A DNA stretch of 61,120 nt, filler included, from Platydemus manokwari (lineage: Eukaryota), in assembly GCA_037951405.1 (NCBI GenBank). It is 6 parts of 6 records of this genome, joined end to end, with 100 filler letters (N's around TTAATTAATTAA, not from the genome) between each part and the next. Parts side by side here need not be neighbours in the genome. Positions count along the whole stretch, not along the records: positions 39,820 to 49,002 come from JBBMOY011286761.1; 5 more parts are not named here. One strand, written 5' to 3'. Below are positions 39,820 through 49,002 of this stretch, piece by piece (position 1 is the first letter of the stretch; every line of letters begins with the position of its first letter). The translations under genes were made by a program, and so were the position numbers. The notes beneath the pieces are model-generated. The model was not told the origin of the DNA and ran no database searches. It worked only from the letters and a program-made list of their open reading frames with translations.

Positions 39820-39822
39820 TCA

Positions 39823-39823
<1 letters not shown>

Positions 39824-39872
<49 letters not shown>
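39824..39872. repeat. 49-nt poly(A) on + (poly(T) on the sense strand of the adjacent retrotransposon)
   Basis: Directly visible; abuts the element's 3' UTR. Confidence 0.95.
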
Positions 39873-39874
<2 letters not shown>

Positions 39875-40046
39875 AATATTTATTTACAAAACATTTAAAT
39901 TTTGCTACAACTTGTACAAAGTCCAAGACCTTCACCACTAATGTGGCAGGGCTTCATATCACAGCTTTGCTTATCTTCCTTCTCCTCAACCTCCAATCTC
40001 ATCCTCATGCGGCAGTCTTGTCATTCAGTTTCTCCAATTTACTTCA

Positions 40047-41024
40047 TTAGCACAATCTGTCAAACACATCTTCATCATCGGAGAAGTCGGTCTCCTCACA
40101 AGATATGTTTGCAGATTTTGTCTTCTTGTTTGAATTTGAATTTGTATTTGCGTTGGGTAATAGAGTGTTTTTACCTTGATGAAATTCCCATTGCATACTG
40201 GCTGACTGGATGTTCGATTGAATACATCTATAAGTCATTTCTTTAATAATATCACATTTAAATCCTAATTTTTTCAATATAGTGTTATTAGTTGGGCCCC
40301 AAGCACCAAACACACCCACTATGAAGGTGTACAGTTCAACAGTCCAATCATGATATCGTTTTTTAATTTCGTTTTTTAATGGTTTATATTTTTCTAAATT
40401 AACAAAGTCAGCATTATCTATTAATCTTGGTTCGTCCATGGGACATTTCACATCAATCAAAGTTATTGTGCTAGTGCGATCGTTCACCACTTGTAAATCG
40501 ACCCTCTGTTTCGAGCCTGTAAATTGACAACTCTTTTCCACATGGACGACACAATCAGTATATTGGTTAATGTAAGACGAAATGATATCCATTATTTTCC
40601 CATGCCTAAATAAGAGGAAACTGTTTGACGCCTTGCACATAGTAAATACATGTGTCTGTGTTTCAGTATCAAACAGACACTTCCGACATTGTTGACCTCT
40701 CATATATTTCTTGTTTAAAGTTGGGAGAGTGTCTGATCTTGCCTTGTTGATGAATAAAAACTCAGCAATGGTCAGACCTCCACCAAATACAATCTTATTC
40801 CATTGAGGGCTGATTGCGGGCATTAGCTCGGTATATCTACCGCTTCTTATTTGTTTTTTCCATTTAATTTGGTAGCTTCTAACAAAACACTGTCTTAATA
40901 ATTTTGGTAGTTCTTTTATTTTCTTGTGACTAACTAATGCCTCCCTCAGCACCTCACCTTCATCTGTAATAACATTTTGAGACACTCTTACACCAATTTC
41001 ACCATCGATGATCTTGAATTGTAT
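40047..41024 (-). pseudogene. Retrotransposon C-terminal region: linker, CCHC zinc knuckle and RLE endonuclease
   Basis: Open frame IQFKIIDGEIGVRVSQNV...CRKCLFDTETQTHVFTMC...RHGKI...QRVDL...IDVKCP...KY...GVFGAW. Confidence 0.9.
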
Positions 41025-41026
41025 AT

Positions 41027-42100
41027 ATCATCTGCATAGGCAAGGGCGGTGATCTTGTGTTCTTTTAGCATAATACCGCAGCTGCTCTCTTCTTCAATTT
41101 GTACTAAAATTGGGTTTATTGCTATATTGAAGAGCAACATTGATATTGGGCACCCTTGCCTAACCCCTCTTGTTATTGGGATTTCATTGGTGATTATTCT
41201 GTTGCACATGAAGGACGTTTTGCAGTTTTTGTAAAGGGCTTCTATGATCTTGATTGCCGAGGCGGCCAAACCCATTCTATTCAGAATAATGAATAATACT
41301 TCTATGTTGATTGACGGAAATGCCTCTTCAATATCTAGAAAACAGACATGCAATTTACTCTTTCTCTTGTCATGATATTTCTCAATTGCCGCTCTTAGAA
41401 GGAAGTTATGCTCACCACATCCGTCTGTCGGGCCTAGGCTTTTCTGAAGCGGATGTAGCAACTGGTTTTCAAATATCCACCTATTGAGTTGGTTGCAAAG
41501 GATACTGGTGTAAACTTTATAGGCACAGTCTAATAAGGCGATTGGTCTCCATGACCCAACCTCAGCATAATGACCTTGCTTCATCGGTTTAGGGATCATT
41601 ATGGTGTTGTATTGGAGCCAATCTTCTGGTATTTTCTTCGTGCTTATACATTCTTGATATATTGATGTTATAATTTCCGTATCTGGGTCAGCGTATAACA
41701 TGTTTTTGTAGCTGACTTTGTTCCTGCCCGGTGCACTAGGGTCCTTCTTTCTAAGAGTGGCTATTGTTGTTTCACACTCTATCTGGCAGAAATCAAAGGT
41801 TGGACCTGTCTTGATGTATGATGTTATTGTGCAAGCCCTAGTGCACGGTGTAGTGCAATTACCTGTACATTCTTCCAGTTTGAAGGATTCGTTTTGTTTG
41901 TTGGTATAGTGGGACTCGAAATCTTCTCTAGCCGGGCAGCAATCGGCGTCGTTTGACTTGGTTGCAATTTCGAATGCTGGGGCTGGCGATATCTTGTATA
42001 ATTGTCTAAGACAAATATCCGTCTTTCCTCTGTTATTACTCAAATCGTTCGATCCCAAGTACAGGTTTGTTGCTTCTTTTATCTCACACAGTCCTTTAAC
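41027..42100 (-). pseudogene. Reverse transcriptase domains 0-5, truncated at YADD
   Basis: Part of ORF 40988..42784. The sequence jumps to the post-thumb linker immediately after YADD. Confidence 0.9.
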
Positions 42101-42299
42101 ATGATTTACAAATTTCTTATATTTTGTGTTCAGATCTTCTTCCTTGATATTCGATGTTAATTCGGAGGCGAGAATCCTTCTTGTTTCGATAGTGGATTTG
42201 TTCTTGGTGATGGTAATGGGCAACGTCAGCATCCCTCTTGAGCTTATTCCTTTTTCCCCCTTGATTATTGCAGCCTTCGCACGGTTCTTGATCCTTTGT

Positions 42300-43350
42300 G
42301 CATTAATCAAGAGGAGGCTTTTCTTTGTGCAGATGTTGCTCATGTACCCGAAGACGATAGGGCCACTATCTCCAAATATGGTTTGTTTCATTCTTTTTGG
42401 ATTGTGGTTACCTTTAAGTAGTTTCTTCCTCCACAATAATATGCATGTGTTCCTATTTGTGTGTTTTAGTAGACTCTTGTGTTCCTCCGAAACCTCATCC
42501 GATCCCGGGTCCAGTAATAAGATCTCCTCCTCTTGTGTGTTGACTATAATTAATATCCATCTTTTGCATTTCATGAGAATTCGGAACATTATAATTTGTC
42601 TATTTTTAAAGAATTTAAAACTTAGATTGTCTGTTATTTCCTCAATTTCGTCTCTTGCAATTGCTGTGGCCAGGTAAGGGTCAAGCACCAGGTATTTCCT
42701 AGCCTTGAAATCAAGTTGAGAGAGTATTCTCATATGTTTCTCAGAAAAGTAAATATAGTCTTCCTTACTAACCATCTCTCCCAAACCGTGACCGCCACCA
42801 ACTAACGAAATATTTCTCTTGTCATTGCCGATATGCCTTACTGTGTCTCTTATTTCGCTAATGTTAATGTCTGTGCATGGTTTGTTATTGGATAAGTTAC
42901 TTGCGTAACCGCAGACTAATGGACCGCAATCGTTTCCATCAGTCTGCAGTTGTCTGTTTGTATGTCTTGGCTTTTTCCTGTAAATGTCTTGTGCCAGTTG
43001 CGTGAGATCCTAATGAAATATAGCAGTAAGTCTACCTTGAATTTGATCTTTATTTTAAATGAGCTCTCGTCTCCAAGGGGGTCAAGAATTTCCGCACCCC
43101 CTGTCTTCTCACCAACTACTAATACCCAATGCATATTGTAGATGTTGACCGGTGCAAGAAACATGGATGAACGTTTAAATTCAAACATGTCCACACCAAT
43201 CTCCGGGAGGCCTACACGCTGGGTAGTAATAATTTCTACAATGTGTGTTCCAAGGTAGAAGTGTCTTTTGGTTCTTGATAAATTGTGTCTTATGTAATGG
43301 TCAATCTGGTCTCCGGTAAACCAGAAAGTGTAATCTGGTGCTGGGGACAA
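42300..43350 (-). pseudogene. Two tandem Ulp1/C48-like cysteine protease domains
   Basis: Domain 1: WFTGDQID...PVNIYNMHWVLVV...ILDPL...(frameshift)...QTDGNDCGPLVCGY. Domain 2: YFSEKHM...KRWILIIV...LLDPG...QTIFGDSGPIVFGY. Confidence 0.8.
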
Positions 43351-43389
43351 TGTGATCTTGATACCGGAGGTGTCCTCAGCACTACCCCA

Positions 43390-44601
43390 TCAACATTGTC
43401 TGTTGAATCGGGGGATTAAATTCTCATTAAGATCTGGTTTCGGTGGGCCTTGATTAGTTTTGCGGCCTGGTATGTAACTAAAGCTTTTATTTAATGGAGA
43501 TGAGCTGATTGGTGGTGTAAAGAGATCAAGTGAGGTTCCGTCGGGATTCTTTTTGTATTGGTCCATGCTTTCTTCGTCTTCGCTAGATGTTATGTATCCT
43601 ACTTTGTTGTTATTCATGTTTTTAATTGTAATGATGTTTTCATGTAGTAGCTCTTTTAGGCCAACTAATTCATTCTCGAGTCTGTCGATTCTGTCGTTTG
43701 TTGCAGGTACGACTAGAGCTGGTTTTTCCTGCGCTCCAGTGTTTGTTGATTTATCGAGGTCCACTTCTTTTTCTGAGATTGACTTAGATTTTGTTTTTCT
43801 TGATTTGCTTGGTGATTCTTTTTTATTATCATTAGCCGTATTTGTTGTTTTCAATGTAACTTGAGTGTTTATTGCGTGTGATTGAGTCTCTTGTGATCTG
43901 TTTTCCATGGTTTGGGTTGGATAAACGGTTTCAATAGTTTTTTGTGTGTTAATTTTGTGGCTTGTGTTATCGATTATTTCATCTTCTTTGCTGTCGTTTT
44001 TGCCTGTAATAGTTCTTGTTGTGTTGTCAGTGTTGTCTTTGATTATTTGTTCTTGTTTTTTCTTTTGCATCTGTTCTTGTCTTTTCATTGCTTTTCTTCT
44101 TTTTGCCATTGTTTGTGCTGAGGCTCTAGGCCCAATTACGCTGATAATGGCCTGTTTTAGATTTCTTATATTTGGCCTTGTGTATTCGCAGTTATTACAA
44201 TCTATCTTTATTGTAATTACATTATCCTTTATTTCAAGCTCCAGAGATTTATTTGGTATTTTATTCTCGTTTTGCTTATTTCTTGGATCCGTTTTATTGG
44301 GAGATCTGCCTCGATTGCCGAAATTATTTAATCTTGTTCTACTCTGATTTCTTAGGTTGTTAGCGTATCTTGGATTGTTACCTCTTGTGTTGCTAATGTT
44401 TCTTCTATTGTATGCATAACTTGTGTTGCTTGTATTTCTTCTATTGTTGTATTGATAATTGCCGCTGTCAGATCTATGTTTTCTTGTTTGACTTTCGTTG
44501 TATCGGGCATTCGGGATCCATTTGACTTTATCTGCGTAATTATTACTTGTATCTTGATATCTAAACTTGTCATTCATATTTTCATAAAATTCTTCTGGCA
44601 T
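43390..44601 (-). CDS. Retrotransposon N-terminal region (403 aa; N/R-rich then K/T/S-rich, with a short coiled-coil-like segment)
   Basis: Uninterrupted ATG-initiated ORF in the same frame as the downstream Ulp1 domain, separated from it by one TGA. Confidence 0.7.
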   Translation of the reverse strand: MPEEFYENMNDKFRYQDTSNNYADKVKWIPNARYNESQTRKHRSDSGNYQYNNRRNTSNTSYAYNRRNISNTRGNNPRYANNLRNQSRTRLNNFGNRGRSPNKTDPRNKQNENKIPNKSLELEIKDNVITIKIDCNNCEYTRPNIRNLKQAIISVIGPRASAQTMAKRRKAMKRQEQMQKKKQEQIIKDNTDNTTRTITGKNDSKEDEIIDNTSHKINTQKTIETVYPTQTMENRSQETQSHAINTQVTLKTTNTANDNKKESPSKSRKTKSKSISEKEVDLDKSTNTGAQEKPALVVPATNDRIDRLENELVGLKELLHENIITIKNMNNNKVGYITSSEDEESMDQYKKNPDGTSLDLFTPPISSSPLNKSFSYIPGRKTNQGPPKPDLNENLIPRFNRQC

Positions 44602-45411
44602 ATTTCTTCAAAAGTAAAATTTAATCGTTAGCGTTAATCTTGAAATATATATATCAATAATAATAATAATTCTTATTTATTAATTATAAATTGACTTTAA
44701 CGACACTTAAGGGCATATTTGGGTCCACAGTTACTGATGATAGCTTCTATTGATTAAACTGAACTCAACAACTATTTATTTATTTATTTAATAACTAAAA
44801 TTGGTACCTTAATGAAAAATTGAATTATTATATATTATAATTGAATTATAATATAAGAGATTCTTTCCATAATCTCCTAGCACCATTTTTCCAGTTAAGA
44901 ATTAACGTAAAACAACTGTTTGTTGTGATTGGTTGAGTATTGAAGACTACACTTTTGGAATATAATTACTGAAAAATCTAAAGGTTCGTAAATTGGTATT
45001 ATTATTATTATTTTACGATTGAGTTATAATCACTAAATCAAATTTAAATTATTAGTTATAATCATGAAGATAAATGCGTGTAATTATTTATTGAAAATAT
45101 AACGAAATACAAATCATTAAAAATAATTGAAATGAACAAAAGGATGTTTTCTCAATATCCAATGCGCAACTAAAATGGGTGACTGAGAATCCGAAAGTCG
45201 ACGGAAAAGAAGGTTGTAGAAAAATTTTAGACACCGACAAAATTTGTTAATCAAATTATATACGATATCAATTTTTGATCATATAAAATTTTTTAAGCTT
45301 AATAATTAAAATAACTTTACTCCTCTCAGTGTAGGTCAAATATTTAATTGTTCACAATAATTTAAATTTCCGATTGGTCGTGGTGCTAATCAATATCTTT
45401 GTGTAATCACA

Positions 45412-45943
45412 ACTCTTACACCAATTTCACCATCGATGATCTTGAATTGTATATTTGTATACAACTTATTTTGGGCGTGTTTGATTGCTTCACGTACCTT
45501 GCCCCACCATGTCAAACTTCTGTCTGTGCCTTTTATATGAGAGTTCAACCATTCTAACGAATCTTGTATGTTGCTCGACTTATTTGGTTGATTTCTTTTT
45601 AGTGATTCCTGGGAAATGTCTTTGATCATGTTGTGCTTGCTGGTCAATAGTGCAAGCCCATGCACTATTGATTGTATTGTGTATTCTGCTGATATACTCC
45701 GGAGTCCACAACCACCTTTTGATCTTGTCGCATATAAAAAGTTTGATGAGCAGAACTTTGGTACTCCGAGTATTTTCTTTAAGATCTTTCTCATCTGAAT
45801 GTCCATTTCATCCAATTTTGTGTATGTAACAAAGTAATTCCGGACAAAGAAGATTACTTTGCTGTGGATAAAAGTGTTGTATGCATCTATTTTCTGCCAT
45901 GGGAGTAGGATGCATTCTTGTAATTTTTCTGTGATGATCTTGA
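45412..45943 (-). mobile_element. Detached RT-thumb fragment of the same retrotransposon family
   Basis: KIITEKLQECILLPWQKIDAYNTFI...LYATRSKGGCGL...IQFKIIDGEIGVR. The last 43 bp (45412-45454) are identical to 40984-41026. Confidence 0.9.
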
Positions 45944-45944
45944 G

Positions 45945-46025
45945 TTATATATAATATAATATAACAAAATATAATATAACAAAATATGAAATATAACAAA
46001 ATATAATATATATAATATAACAAAA
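45945..46025. repeat. (ATAAT)/(ATAACAAAAT) low-complexity repeat
   Basis: Directly visible; abuts the 5' end of the RT fragment. Confidence 0.8.
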
Positions 46026-47779
46026 CATCGTCTCATATCAAAATTCTTAAATCAATTTTAATTTTATTATTATAACCCAAAGGGCTTTAAAAAGTGAGTT
46101 ATACTCTAGTAAATGTTCCGTTCCACGAAAATCTTTAGTAAAAGGCGAAAGATTTAATCGTTCGTATCATTCTTGAAACGGAACAAGAGTTACATGCTTA
46201 GACTTTTATATTACCTTTTTGTCATAGATCACATTTTAAATATAGATTATTGTGTCATTTACATACAATTAAATTCAGTCATTAGTAATAAATAGATTTG
46301 TGATTATATAATCAATTAACGATTTAATTCATTAGAAACAATGAATAAATACAATTTTATACAAAAATTATCAGGATTTCATCCTTCGAAAATAAACTAA
46401 AAACAAACTACTTATAAGTAGTATCGAAATTATATATATTATTTCTTTAGATAAATTACCAGTAAATATATTTTTCATGTTTAATTTTTGTTGAAAGACA
46501 TTAACTCATTTATGGCGATATTGACATTCATCACAACCCCTACGATGTCTAAAATGTGAATATCTAAAATACATTAATAGTTGTATAATTTATTTAACAA
46601 ACCAAAATGCCAGAAATGATTTCAATACTCAACAGATTAAAAATAATTTGGATTAATACTAAAGAAAAATTATAACAAGAATATTTTAAAATTAACTAAT
46701 TATTTGAATAATATTTAAAAACATGCACATTATAATATCGATATAGTAAATAACAAAGTCCCCAAAAAATATAGTCAGAACAAATAAAGTACATCTTTGA
46801 TGAATGCAATTTTTTGGTAAATACTTCTGGTAAAGTAACCAAATCAATTATGAAAACTAATCTAAAAATACAAGTATAAACTTAACAATAAATCAAATGA
46901 GTAAACGAGAATTGCGTAAAATCCATTTTATTTATTTAAAAATCATAATATCACTAATTCACTTTAGAGTAATTAATCTAAATAATATTCATCATTGAAG
47001 GCTGAAGTTTCTCATATGATTATAATTCATCAAGAATGCTTGTTTTGATGATTTATACAGTTAAATTAAACTTGTAATCCATTTGAATCCCATCATGAAA
47101 ACGGAAACATAGTTAAGACTAAAATAAAATCTCGAAAATCTTTTGCAATTTTCAATTTGAGATAATAATTGAATATTTAAACAAGCTCCGTCATGATAAT
47201 TAAATCAATTTTATCGAAGAATCTCATTTAGATAAGAGCAACAATAAAGTTAAAACACAACATTTTATTAATAGCATTATATAAAATGTAATAATAAGAA
47301 AAGTGGTTAAATTTAAGGTAATTCGTAACTTAAAAGTTAATTTTAAAAATTTATTCACAAATCTTTTCTTGTGATAGTTGACGAATAAAAAAACTGGAAT
47401 ATTAATACCTTGTTATCCACTTATTCACAGTAATAAATAAATTTTTTAATCATCAAATAAGTTTTTCTTAATGTGAATATTGTAAACGGATGCTATATGA
47501 AAAAACGCACAATGAAAGTGAACTGAAAAGTCACGAAACCGACTAATATCTTGATTGCAATTGTTCAAACGAATATGATTTTAAATCTTTGATATTTCTA
47601 TTGATTATGAGTCCTAACAAATACAAAAATTCATTTTAAAAGAACTTTTTTACAGGTTTTCACTACTTTAGCAATTACTATGTTTCAGATCTTTTCTTTA
47701 CATCCATTTTAGTTATTCGTCATCGTAATCATCCTTTTTTGGTTTTTTGATTGATTGGAATTCTATGCTGTCATGTGAT

Positions 47780-47900
47780 CTTTCTAGAAATCACTATATA
47801 TTCTTTCGAATAATAAGGGCCCTCATATTTCCTTTCGAGTATTGTCTTAGCCTCTTCCGTTGTCAATGAACTATCACTATGTGTCTCTCCATTTGTTTTC
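47780..47900 (-). mobile_element. Possible gypsy integrase GPY/F remnant
   Basis: Minus-strand KTILERKYEGPYY. Confidence 0.3.
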
Positions 47901-49002
47901 ACACATTTCTTTGTAATTAGGTACTGTCATACCAATATAAAAAGTGGACTTACTTCTGTTATAAAACAAAAAAATATCTAGGAATTGATGAACTTCTCTA
48001 GATATCTATTAAAAGTCAATGTACAAACCCAGACAATAGAGACTCAAAAGACTACTCAAATACTGACCAAAAATGAAAGAGAGAAATTTATCAAAGATAG
48101 ATTATGGAAAAAAATGAATTAACAAGGCAGTGACCACGATGAGTACAGAGTGAATAATATATATTGTAAAATAAATTTGCTCAAATTTAATACACGTAAT
48201 TTACTCTACGGTACTTGATGAGTCAGATATTGATAAAATTATCTAACCATATACCTACTCTCACAGCTTAAGAGATTCGTGATAATTATCGCGAAAACAA
48301 GGAATAATCTATTTCCGTGGGTTGTGATAAGACTAGACTTGTATTTCCAAGATTGTGTACGGAATCGATCAGTTTTTGGTAAACTGACAGAACCTTATTT
48401 AAGTTTTTGTGTTGTACATTACTGCATTAAATATAACATAAGCATAAATTACTGTTTTTTGGAGTCAGATAAATAAGTTAACGAGTAATGTTGCGTGACA
48501 TACCCGGTAAATCCAATAATTATTTGAACAAATTACTATATAAAATCGAATTATAAAATCTTTTAATTTTTCTTTCTTTTTTTAAATCTTTCATTTTTTC
48601 AAAAATCACCAACCTTATTTTAAAAAAACTCACAATGACGAAAATTCAATAACGATAATTTTGCTGGGGTTCTGGTTCAACTAGTTGATTAAAAACAATT
48701 GATTTACATTGAAAAATGTGTACATGATAGTGCGTATCGAATGTGTATTTATAATAATCATTATTTATATACGTAAAATAATATTTTTAATAAAATCCCT
48801 AATTGAAAACCCGTCGAAATCTTCTAGAAAAATAAATTAATTTATAAAATATCAATATGTAATGAGATATAAATAATTAATAAATATAATAAAAATTATA
48901 TAATAAATTGTCATCTGTCTCTGCGCATGAAAATTCTGTGGCAGAATAAAATATATCGCTCGATTAAATTTAATCGAGAGATATTTTCTCTGCTTAATAA
49001 AT

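What the first reader, a model, noticed from the sequence alone, without database searches (positions are those of the whole stretch)
42300..43350. Retrotransposon with a tandem active plus catalytically dead Ulp1 (SUMO-protease-like) pair
Seen: two consecutive C48-like units precede the RT. Unit 1 has the full triad: His in NMHW (codon 43129-43131), Asp in ILDPL, and Gln/Cys in QTDGNDCG (Cys 42926-42928), recoverable across one frameshift near 43010. Unit 2 keeps the W, LDP, Q and D-x-GP-x-x-x-GY scaffold but has His->Arg (KRW, 42560-42562) and Cys->Ser (GDSGP, 42365-42367). The Arg codon is AGA, three substitutions from CAY, in an otherwise little-decayed copy, so the inactivation probably predates this insertion. 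Established: single Ulp1 domains occur in NeSL-clade elements, and SUMO is used in transposon silencing. Inference: a protease/pseudo-protease pair in which the dead unit binds SUMO/UBL substrates or scaffolds polyprotein processing, possibly countering host silencing.
Basis: partly seen in the sequence, partly recalled or inferred. Interest (0 to 1): 0.75.

Follow-up and report, generated by a model that had tools for sequence, protein, structure and literature searches.

The report
Retrotransposon with live and dead Ulp1 domains
A broken copy of an R2-type retrotransposon carries an intact-looking Ulp1/SUMO-protease domain followed by a second copy that has lost its catalytic cysteine. The same live-plus-dead pair is kept in about twenty distant relatives, so the dead domain is an old, selected part of the element and not decay.

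Summary

**Element.** It lies on the minus strand: ORF1, Ulp1 unit 1 (His, Asp, Gln, Cys), an LVGGG linker, unit 2 (Arg for His, Ser for Cys), reverse transcriptase, then a CCHC plus restriction-like endonuclease.

**Unit 2 is a true C48 domain.**
- The unit 1 and unit 2 profiles align at 99.5% probability, E 1.4e-22.
- The AlphaFold model (pLDDT 82.6) matches yeast Ulp1 at Z 18.9, 2.5 Å over 168 residues.

**The inactivation is ancient.**
- About 20 metagenomic relatives, 20-36% identical, keep the tandem.
- Unit 1 always has His and Cys. No unit 2 has Cys: 14 Ser, 1 Thr, 1 Gly. Its His site varies.
- A tree splits unit 1 from unit 2 at 100/99 support.
- In one close clade unit 2 is as conserved as unit 1, without gaps.

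**New here.** A conserved hydrophobic-x-Gly-Gly motif sits between the units and is a candidate self-cleavage site.

**Function (inferred).** Unit 1 cleaves. Unit 2 acts as a natural Cys-to-Ser substrate trap or binding module.

**Correction.** This copy is not "little decayed": it has a frameshift, a stop and a rearranged reverse transcriptase. No paper I could search describes the tandem.

The parts
43393..44601 (-). ORF1, 403 aa, rich in Asn, Lys and Arg, with no family match
   Evidence: ORF list. Pfam found nothing significant.
43390..43392 (-). TGA stop of ORF1, in the same frame as unit 1. There is no ATG between it and unit 1.
   Evidence: Three-frame translation and codon check.
42827..43332 (-). 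Ulp1/C48 unit 1 with the full catalytic set: His 43131-43129, Asp 43083-43081, Gln 42946-42944, Cys 42928-42926. It is split by one frameshift.
   Evidence: The Pfam Peptidase_C48 match is weak in the window (E 0.037) but strong in relatives (E 1e-13 to 1e-22). The family profile matches SENP1, SENP2 and Ulp1 at E 1e-10.
42947..43009 (-). Interval that holds the frameshift inside unit 1
   Evidence: The frames overlap here. The tblastn segments to P0005 change frame across a 116-nt gap.
42791..42805 (-). Linker motif Leu-Val-Gly-Gly-Gly between the two units, a candidate cleavage site
   Evidence: Coordinates. A hydrophobic-x-Gly-Gly is conserved at this place in most relatives, and in most of them it is the only GG in the first ~450 residues.
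42245..42763 (-). Ulp1/C48 unit 2, a pseudoprotease: Arg 42562-42560 at the His site, Trp kept, Asp 42511-42509 kept, Ser 42367-42365 at the Cys site
   Evidence: AlphaFold2 pLDDT 82.6, pTM 0.76. Foldseek top hit is Ulp1 2hl8, E 1.3e-7. VIA-align gives Z 18.9, rmsd 2.5 Å over 168 residues to Ulp1. hhalign against unit 1 gives 99.5%.
41027..42244 (-). Basic spacer and reverse transcriptase up to the YADD motif (LAYADD at 41044-41027)
   Evidence: Pfam RVT_1 E 2.4e-24. tblastn to P0006 residues 65-700. Motif coordinates.
40984..41026 (.). 43-nt perfect direct repeat, copy 2. The coding sequence jumps here from YADD to the end of the thumb region, in another frame, and hits TAA at 40990-40988.
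   Evidence: the repeat finder family D6. tblastn break at 41024. Contigs of other copies run on unlike at 41024/41026.
40047..40985 (-). C-terminal CCHC zinc knuckle (40688-40635) and restriction-like endonuclease (RVDL at 40505, DVKCP at 40460-40440)
   Evidence: ORF. Motifs. tblastn to P0006 residues 952-1264. The family profile matches the R2 endonuclease domain.
45408..45929 (-). Displaced thumb fragment (equivalent to P0006 residues 790-966). It ends in copy 1 of the 43-nt repeat (45412-45454).
   Evidence: tblastn, the repeat finder D6, ORF 45815-45390.

Best explanation
This is a damaged copy of a non-LTR retrotransposon of the R2 type, with a restriction-like endonuclease. Its family carries two Ulp1/C48 domains at the N-terminus, made by one ancient duplication. 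SHOWN: unit 1 keeps His-Asp-Gln-Cys in every member. Unit 2 keeps the C48 fold, the Trp next to the His site, the Asp and the 'SGP' turn, but never has the nucleophile Cys, and its His site drifts (Lys, Arg, Tyr, Ser, Thr, Gln, rarely His). The pair has been co-inherited across lineages that are now only 20-36% identical, and unit 2 is under purifying selection. INFERRED: (1) unit 1 is the working protease. It cuts the element's own protein at the conserved hydrophobic-x-Gly-Gly motif in the disordered linker between the units, as clan CE viral proteases cut GG|X sites in polyproteins, and it may also remove ubiquitin-like modifiers. (2) Unit 2 then sits at the N-terminus of the reverse transcriptase-endonuclease protein as a non-catalytic binding module. 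It would be a natural 'substrate trap', like the laboratory Ulp1 C580S and SENP1 C603S mutants. It would hold a Gly-Gly tail, either of a ubiquitin-like modifier on host or element proteins or of the cleaved unit 1 product. My confidence is about 0.95 in the shown part and about 0.4 in the inferred mechanism.
For: Codons and motifs are confirmed. Unit 2 is homologous to unit 1 (hhalign 99.5%, E 1.4e-22). The C48 fold of unit 2 is supported by pLDDT 82.6, Foldseek hits to Ulp1, SENP and NEDP1 at E 1e-7 to 1e-6, and Z 18.9 to Ulp1 residues 444-621. In relatives both units score on Pfam Peptidase_C48; in P0001 the best stretch is unit 2. A search of 1.84 billion representative proteins found 17 relatives, and most of the longer ones span the unit 1 C-terminus plus unit 2. 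The word search added P0027-P0029. At the Cys site, unit 1 has Cys in all 16 rows that cover it; unit 2 has Ser 14, Thr 1, Gly 1 and Cys 0. The tree splits unit 1 from unit 2 at 100/99, and the two halves share three sub-clades: P0005/27/28, P0011/29 and P0019+(P0011,P0029). In the clade P0005/P0027/P0028, unit 2 is 55-61% identical, the same as unit 1, with no gaps in 170 residues; reverse transcriptase is 77-78%. The GG motif is conserved in a linker with pLDDT below 50. A related element with one active C48 (L001) has neither the GG motif nor unit 2. Ulp1 C580S binds SUMO1 at 12.8 nM and traps substrates (PMC3216068). Solved complexes of the Cys-to-Ser mutants SENP1 C603S and SENP2 C548S with SUMO are among the fold matches.
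Against: No experiment exists and no RNA evidence for expression was found. Unit 2 is the least conserved folded part across the whole family (mean 20% identity, against 28% for unit 1 and 41% for reverse transcriptase). A Gly-rich linker may be only a flexible hinge, and four lineages (P0001, P0007, P0011, P0029) lack a clean GG. The tandem model gives no confident packing between the domains (pTM 0.41). The complex test of unit 1 with its tail against unit 2 gave no verdict. Typical SENPs need the ubiquitin-like fold in front of GG, and the linker has none. Whether unit 2 keeps the residues that contact SUMO, ubiquitin or NEDD8 was not mapped.
Confidence: 0.6

Rival explanations
1. Unit 2 is a regulatory or scaffolding partner of unit 1. 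It would be a pseudoenzyme that positions or activates the live protease, or dimerises with it, rather than a reader of ubiquitin-like proteins.
For: The two units are always adjacent and co-inherited, with three sub-clades in common between the two halves of the tree. They are equally conserved in the close clade. Active-plus-dead paralogue pairs are a known design, for example MPN+/MPN- deubiquitinase pairs (my own knowledge).
Against: There is no confident interface between the domains in the tandem model (pTM 0.41, linker pLDDT below 50). The complex test gave no verdict. A candidate cleavage site between the units would separate them.
Confidence: 0.18
2. Unit 2 has become a nucleic-acid-binding or target-binding domain. 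It would take the place of the N-terminal zinc-finger and Myb modules that R2 elements use to find their site, and its protease ancestry would be irrelevant.
For: No zinc-finger or Myb domain was found N-terminal to reverse transcriptase in any member. A basic helical stretch follows unit 2 directly. The R2 structures match the family profile only from position 443 on.
Against: The residues best kept in unit 2 (Trp, Asp and the Ser-Gly turn) are those of the old active-site cleft, not a new basic surface.
Confidence: 0.12
3. Unit 2 is still an enzyme, a serine hydrolase that uses the conserved Ser with His (as in P0006, P0010, P0019) or with Lys as general base.
For: Ser is nearly invariant at the nucleophile site, and the residue at the His site is basic (Lys, Arg or His) in most lineages.
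Against: The His site is Tyr, Ser, Thr or Gln in five proteins, and it changes Tyr/Ser/Thr within one close clade. The oxyanion Gln is not kept. Cys-to-Ser mutants of C48 enzymes are inactive traps (PMC3216068).
Confidence: 0.07
4. Unit 2 is decay of this one copy, or a chance resemblance, with no function.
For: The copy is damaged elsewhere. Pfam alone scores unit 2 of the window below threshold (E 0.041).
Against: The same substitutions occur in about 20 independent open reading frames from other sources. The fold match is Z 18.9 and the profile-profile E is 1.4e-22.
Confidence: 0.02

Closest known systems
[quoted passage not shown]
   Same: A C48-type protease sits N-terminal to reverse transcriptase, with a C-terminal zinc knuckle and restriction-like endonuclease. 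They belong to the R2-type group.
   Different: Only one protease domain is reported there. Here a second, catalytically dead copy and a GG linker lie between the protease and reverse transcriptase. I could not test the reverse transcriptase phylogeny against NeSL or Utopia references. No spliced-leader or U2 target was seen.
Ulp1 C580S, SENP1 C603S and SENP2 C548S laboratory substrate-trap mutants (PMC3216068; PDB 2g4d, 5aek)
   Same: Same fold and the same Cys-to-Ser change at the nucleophile. These mutants bind SUMO tightly without cleaving it.
   Different: Unit 2 is a natural domain that has also lost His and the oxyanion Gln. Its ligand is unknown.
Clan CE polyprotein proteases of large DNA viruses (adenain, ASFV pS273R, poxvirus I7L). 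They cut at Gly-Gly|X or Ala-Gly|X by my own knowledge, and they appear as lower fold matches.
   Same: A C48-like fold is used to cut the element's own proteins at a GG motif that has no ubiquitin-like fold in front. The hydrophobic-x-G-G pattern resembles adenain's consensus.
   Different: Cleavage is not shown here, and those viruses carry no dead duplicate next to the protease.
Tandem papain-like proteases with one dead copy in arterivirus nsp1 (PCP-alpha dead, PCP-beta live in equine arteritis virus; my own knowledge)
   Same: A duplicated cysteine protease at the N-terminus of a replicase polyprotein, with one copy inactivated yet retained.
   Different: A different protease clan, an RNA virus, and the order of live and dead copies differs.
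R2 retrotransposon proteins with solved structures (9nl2, 9nl3, 9dou, 8gh6)
   Same: Reverse transcriptase, thumb, CCHC and restriction-like endonuclease align with the family profile at E 2e-95 to 8e-58.
   Different: R2 has N-terminal zinc-finger and Myb DNA-binding domains and no protease.

Membership tests
Peptidase C48 (Ulp1/SENP), clan CE: unit 1 | Catalytic His-Asp-Cys triad with oxyanion Gln in the order H..D..Q..C | tested here: met
   NMHW, ILDPL and QTDGNDCGP are present, and these residues are kept in every relative row that covers them.
Peptidase C48 (Ulp1/SENP), clan CE: unit 1 | Significant match to the family model | tested here: met
   The window copy is split by a frameshift, so it scores only E 0.037. 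Relatives score E 1e-13 to 1e-22. The family profile matches SENP1, SENP2 and Ulp1 at E 1e-10.
Peptidase C48 (Ulp1/SENP), clan CE: unit 2 | C48 fold | tested here: met
   Z 18.9, rmsd 2.5 Å over 168 residues to Ulp1. Foldseek probability 1.00. hhalign to unit 1 gives 99.5%.
Peptidase C48 (Ulp1/SENP), clan CE: unit 2 | Catalytic Cys and His | tested here: not met
   Ser replaces Cys and Arg replaces His in the window. No relative has Cys in unit 2. Unit 2 is a C48-derived pseudoprotease, not a protease member.
Non-LTR retrotransposons with restriction-like endonuclease (R2 group) | Reverse transcriptase followed by a CCHC motif and a PD-(D/E)xK endonuclease at the C-terminus | tested here: met
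   RVT_1 E 2.4e-24. CCHC at 40688-40635 and RVDL/DVKCP at 40505-40440. The profile matches the R2 reverse transcriptase and endonuclease domains at E 2e-95.
NeSL clade | Reverse transcriptase groups with NeSL-1 in a phylogeny | not testable with these tools
   No Repbase or NeSL reference sequences could be fetched. The 2000 NeSL-1 paper is not held.
NeSL clade | Insertion into spliced-leader genes | tested here: not met
   Rfam finds only a U5 snRNA gene in the piece. This is one rearranged copy, so target preference stays open.
Utopia | Insertion into U2 snRNA genes | tested here: not met
   No U2 match in the piece.

The most novel reading that the evidence does not exclude
A retrotransposon family has turned a duplicated SUMO/ubiquitin-like protease into a two-part device. 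The live copy frees the reverse transcriptase protein by cutting a built-in Leu-x-Gly-Gly site. The dead Cys-to-Ser copy, now at the new N-terminus, works as a high-affinity reader of ubiquitin-like modifications. It would tether the integration machinery to modified chromatin or shield it from SUMO-dependent silencing. This would be the first transposon-encoded ubiquitin-like 'reader' derived from a protease.
Probability: 0.2. Interest if true: 0.8.

Novelty: new variant of a known kind. Interest (0 to 1): 0.6.

Why it matters
Single Ulp1-like proteases in NeSL and Utopia elements have been known since 2000, but their role has never been tested. This family adds two fixed landmarks that make the question testable: a conserved Gly-Gly motif right after the live protease, and a conserved dead copy carrying the very substitution that makes Ulp1 a nanomolar SUMO trap.

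If the dead unit binds a ubiquitin-like protein, it would link a retrotransposon's own protein directly to the SUMO/ubiquitin systems that hosts use to silence transposons. It would also be a natural, compact binder of such modifiers. Even on the cautious reading, it is a clear case of a pseudoenzyme kept by selection inside a selfish element.

Tried and rejected
- **Word search with unit 2**: nothing found. The length limits of 329-1046 aa exclude both full-length elements and short fragments.
- **Protein Atlas look-up of the 598-aa ORF**: no usable hit.
- **Single-sequence search of unit 2 against solved structures**: only a chance hit at E 0.75. The relation to Ulp1 shows only by profile and fold.
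- **Complex prediction** of P0004 unit 1 with its GG tail against unit 2: no verdict, so it counts neither for nor against.
- **Scan of metagenome contigs with A4**: 80 loci, but only distant reverse transcriptases. Just one (L001) has a C48 domain, a single active one. None of the 20 best loci has an Rfam RNA gene.
- **Read laying at 80% likeness**: shows other copies, mostly of the reverse transcriptase part. It lists too few variants in 42300-43350 to compare copies or to estimate dN/dS.
- **Rejected readings:** copy-specific decay, chance resemblance and an assembly artefact as explanations of unit 2.
- **Organism:** it is given only as a code. I did not try to name it.

Full report
**What is in the piece.** Only 39820-49002 is genome. 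The element lies on the minus strand. Reading 5' to 3':
- ORF1, 44601-43393, 403 aa, with no family match.
- A TGA at 43392-43390.
- In the same frame, Ulp1 unit 1.
- A frameshift between 43009 and about 42947.
- One frame open from 43009 to 40991. It holds the end of unit 1, the linker LVGGG (42805-42791), unit 2 (42763-42245), a basic spacer and reverse transcriptase (Pfam RVT_1 E 2.4e-24) as far as LAYADD (41044-41027).
- A last ORF (40985-40047) with a CCHC knuckle and a PD-(D/E)xK restriction-like endonuclease.

A profile of the family matches solved R2 proteins over reverse transcriptase and endonuclease at E 2e-95. The element is therefore an R2-type non-LTR retrotransposon.

**The observation.** Within the window the two units are detectably alike and in register. 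The C-terminal parts give blastp E 4e-7, and the cores align HW over RW and LDP over LDP.

**Relatives.** The word search found nothing for unit 2. The full HMMER search of 1.84 billion representatives, with the unit 1 C-terminus plus unit 2 as query, found 17 proteins. Most of the longer ones align across both parts, so they share the tandem. A profile word search added P0027, P0028 and P0029.
- All come from metagenome assemblies (JGI, ENA, Logan). None carries an organism name, and the only descriptive name is an automatic Pfam-style label on P0019.
- Pfam scores both units as Peptidase_C48 in P0004, P0005, P0019 and P0001. In P0001 the best stretch is unit 2.

**Catalytic sites across the family.**
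- Unit 1 has His-Trp, Asp, Gln and Cys in essentially every row that covers those columns.
- In unit 2 the Cys site is Ser in 14 proteins, Thr in one, Gly in one and never Cys.
- The His site in unit 2 is Lys, Arg, Tyr, Ser, Thr or Gln, and is His only in P0006 and P0010/P0019.
- The neighbouring Trp and the Asp are mostly kept.
- In the nine-sequence alignment A5, which includes one fragment, the only invariant columns anywhere are the unit 1 His, an Arg, the second Gly of the linker, the unit 2 Trp and the unit 2 Ser.

**Unit 2 is a real C48 domain.**
- Profiles of the two units align with hhalign probability 99.5%, E 1.4e-22 over 160 columns. DCGP lies over xSGP and HW over (K/R)W.
- The AlphaFold2 model of the window's unit 2 has pLDDT 82.6 and pTM 0.76.
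- Its best Foldseek matches are Ulp1, SENP1, 2, 3 and 5, and NEDP1 (E 1e-7 to 1e-6).
- The second-look aligner gives Z 18.9, rmsd 2.5 Å over 168 residues against Ulp1 residues 444-621, the whole catalytic domain.
- The model of the P0004 tandem shows the same helix-strand pattern twice, joined by a disordered linker (pLDDT below 50 at 197-219). The relative position of the domains is not confident (pTM 0.41).

**Age and selection.**
- A maximum-likelihood tree of 11 unit 1 and 15 unit 2 sequences splits the two kinds at 100/99 support.
- Three sub-clades recur in both halves: P0005/27/28, P0011/29 and P0019+(P0011,P0029).
- The single protease of a related one-protease element (L001) sits with unit 1. 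One duplication therefore predates the family.
- Across the whole family unit 2 is the least conserved folded part: mean 20% identity, against 28% for unit 1 and 41% for reverse transcriptase.
- In the close clade P0005/P0027/P0028, unit 2 is 55-61% identical, exactly as unit 1, with no gap in 170 residues. That is not neutral decay.
- The His site changes Tyr, Ser, Thr within that clade while Ser-Gly-Pro stays. This fits a non-catalytic role that still needs the old cleft.

**The Gly-Gly linker.**
- Between the last helix of unit 1 and the first helix of unit 2, most members have (L/I/V/M)-x-G-G, often followed by a third Gly. In most members it is the only GG in the first ~450 residues.
- The one-protease relative L001 has neither the motif nor unit 2.
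- C48 and other clan CE proteases cut after Gly-Gly. A hydrophobic residue four places before the cut is typical of ubiquitin, NEDD8 and ISG15 tails and of adenain sites, rather than of SUMO's Gln-Thr-Gly-Gly (my own knowledge).
- I therefore propose self-cleavage here, but a plain flexible hinge is not excluded.

**Proposed role of unit 2.** The natural Cys-to-Ser change is the one that makes yeast Ulp1 a substrate trap. That mutant binds SUMO1 at 12.8 nM and relocates to SUMO-modified septins (PMC3216068). SENP1 C603S and SENP2 C548S complexes with SUMO are among the fold matches. This supports, but does not show, a binding role. A complex prediction of unit 1 with its tail against unit 2 gave no verdict.

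**State of this copy.** tblastn with P0006 maps as follows:
- residues 65-700 map to 42955-41024;
- residues 790-966 map to 45929-45408, upstream of ORF1;
- residues 952-1264 map to 41024-40077.

A perfect 43-nt direct repeat (40984-41026 and 45412-45454) flanks the 4385-nt block that holds ORF1, both units and reverse transcriptase up to YADD. Contigs of other copies in the one sequencing run that holds this stretch diverge at 41024/41026. The locus is therefore rearranged. Either a 5'-truncated copy is interrupted by this block, or recombination occurred through the repeat. With the frameshift and the TAA at 40990-40988, the copy cannot make the full protein.

**Literature.** Seven full-text searches found only the report that NeSL families and Utopia-1_TSP have an N-terminal Ulp1-like protease, drawn as one domain (PMC4640811). 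I found no description of a tandem or of a dead copy. Subscription papers and Repbase entries were not searchable, so prior notice there cannot be excluded.

**Verdict.** The function is inferred, and the architecture is a new variant of a known kind.

Noticed in passing
window 46075-46192 (minus strand): A complete U5 spliceosomal snRNA gene (Rfam RF00020, 70.6 bits, model positions 1-117) lies about 150 nt upstream of the displaced thumb fragment of the element.
   Followed up: partly
window 44616-44645: The 30 nt just before the ORF1 start codon are 80% identical to U5 snRNA positions 15-44 (46149-46178). This is the best U5-like stretch in the piece, local score 30 against 24 for the next best window away from the leader and a median of 15. 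It is not significant by Rfam. It might hint at U5-associated insertion or a template switch onto U5 RNA.
   Followed up: partly
window 40984-41026 and 45412-45454: A perfect 43-nt direct repeat flanks a 4385-nt block. The RT thumb is displaced upstream of ORF1 and the RT is cut right after YADD. How this arose is not known: nested insertion, recombination through the repeat, or a template jump.
   Followed up: partly
window 41007-41027, 44633-44653, 45435-45455, 45933-45953: A 21-nt motif (GATGATCTTGAATTGTATATA on the plus strand) recurs four times at 81-100% identity, each time at or next to a junction of element parts (family D3). This may reflect microhomology at the joins.
   Followed up: no
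window 43390-43392: The ORF1 stop (TGA) is in the same frame as unit 1, and no ATG lies between them. Relatives start with Met 15-55 residues before the conserved WF(T/S)D..I motif. It could be a nonsense mutation, readthrough or a lost start codon.
   Followed up: no
window 39824-39872: A run of 49 A on the plus strand gives poly(T) on the element's sense strand, about 175 nt after its last stop codon. That is the wrong strand for the element's own tail.
   Followed up: no
P0015, residues about 400-530: This 1540-aa relative has a long insert inside unit 2 that looks like a third, further degraded C48-like piece with a Trp and an NPT motif.
   Followed up: no
L001:765-4220 (Ga0073919_1000541): A related RLE element (29% identity over RT-RLE) has a single active C48 domain (His, Asp, Cys). 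It has no GG linker and no second unit, so it is a natural comparison for the tandem family.
   Followed up: partly
window 44351-44447: Three imperfect direct repeats of about 28-36 nt lie inside ORF1 and encode a repeated Asn/Arg-rich peptide (family D5).
   Followed up: no
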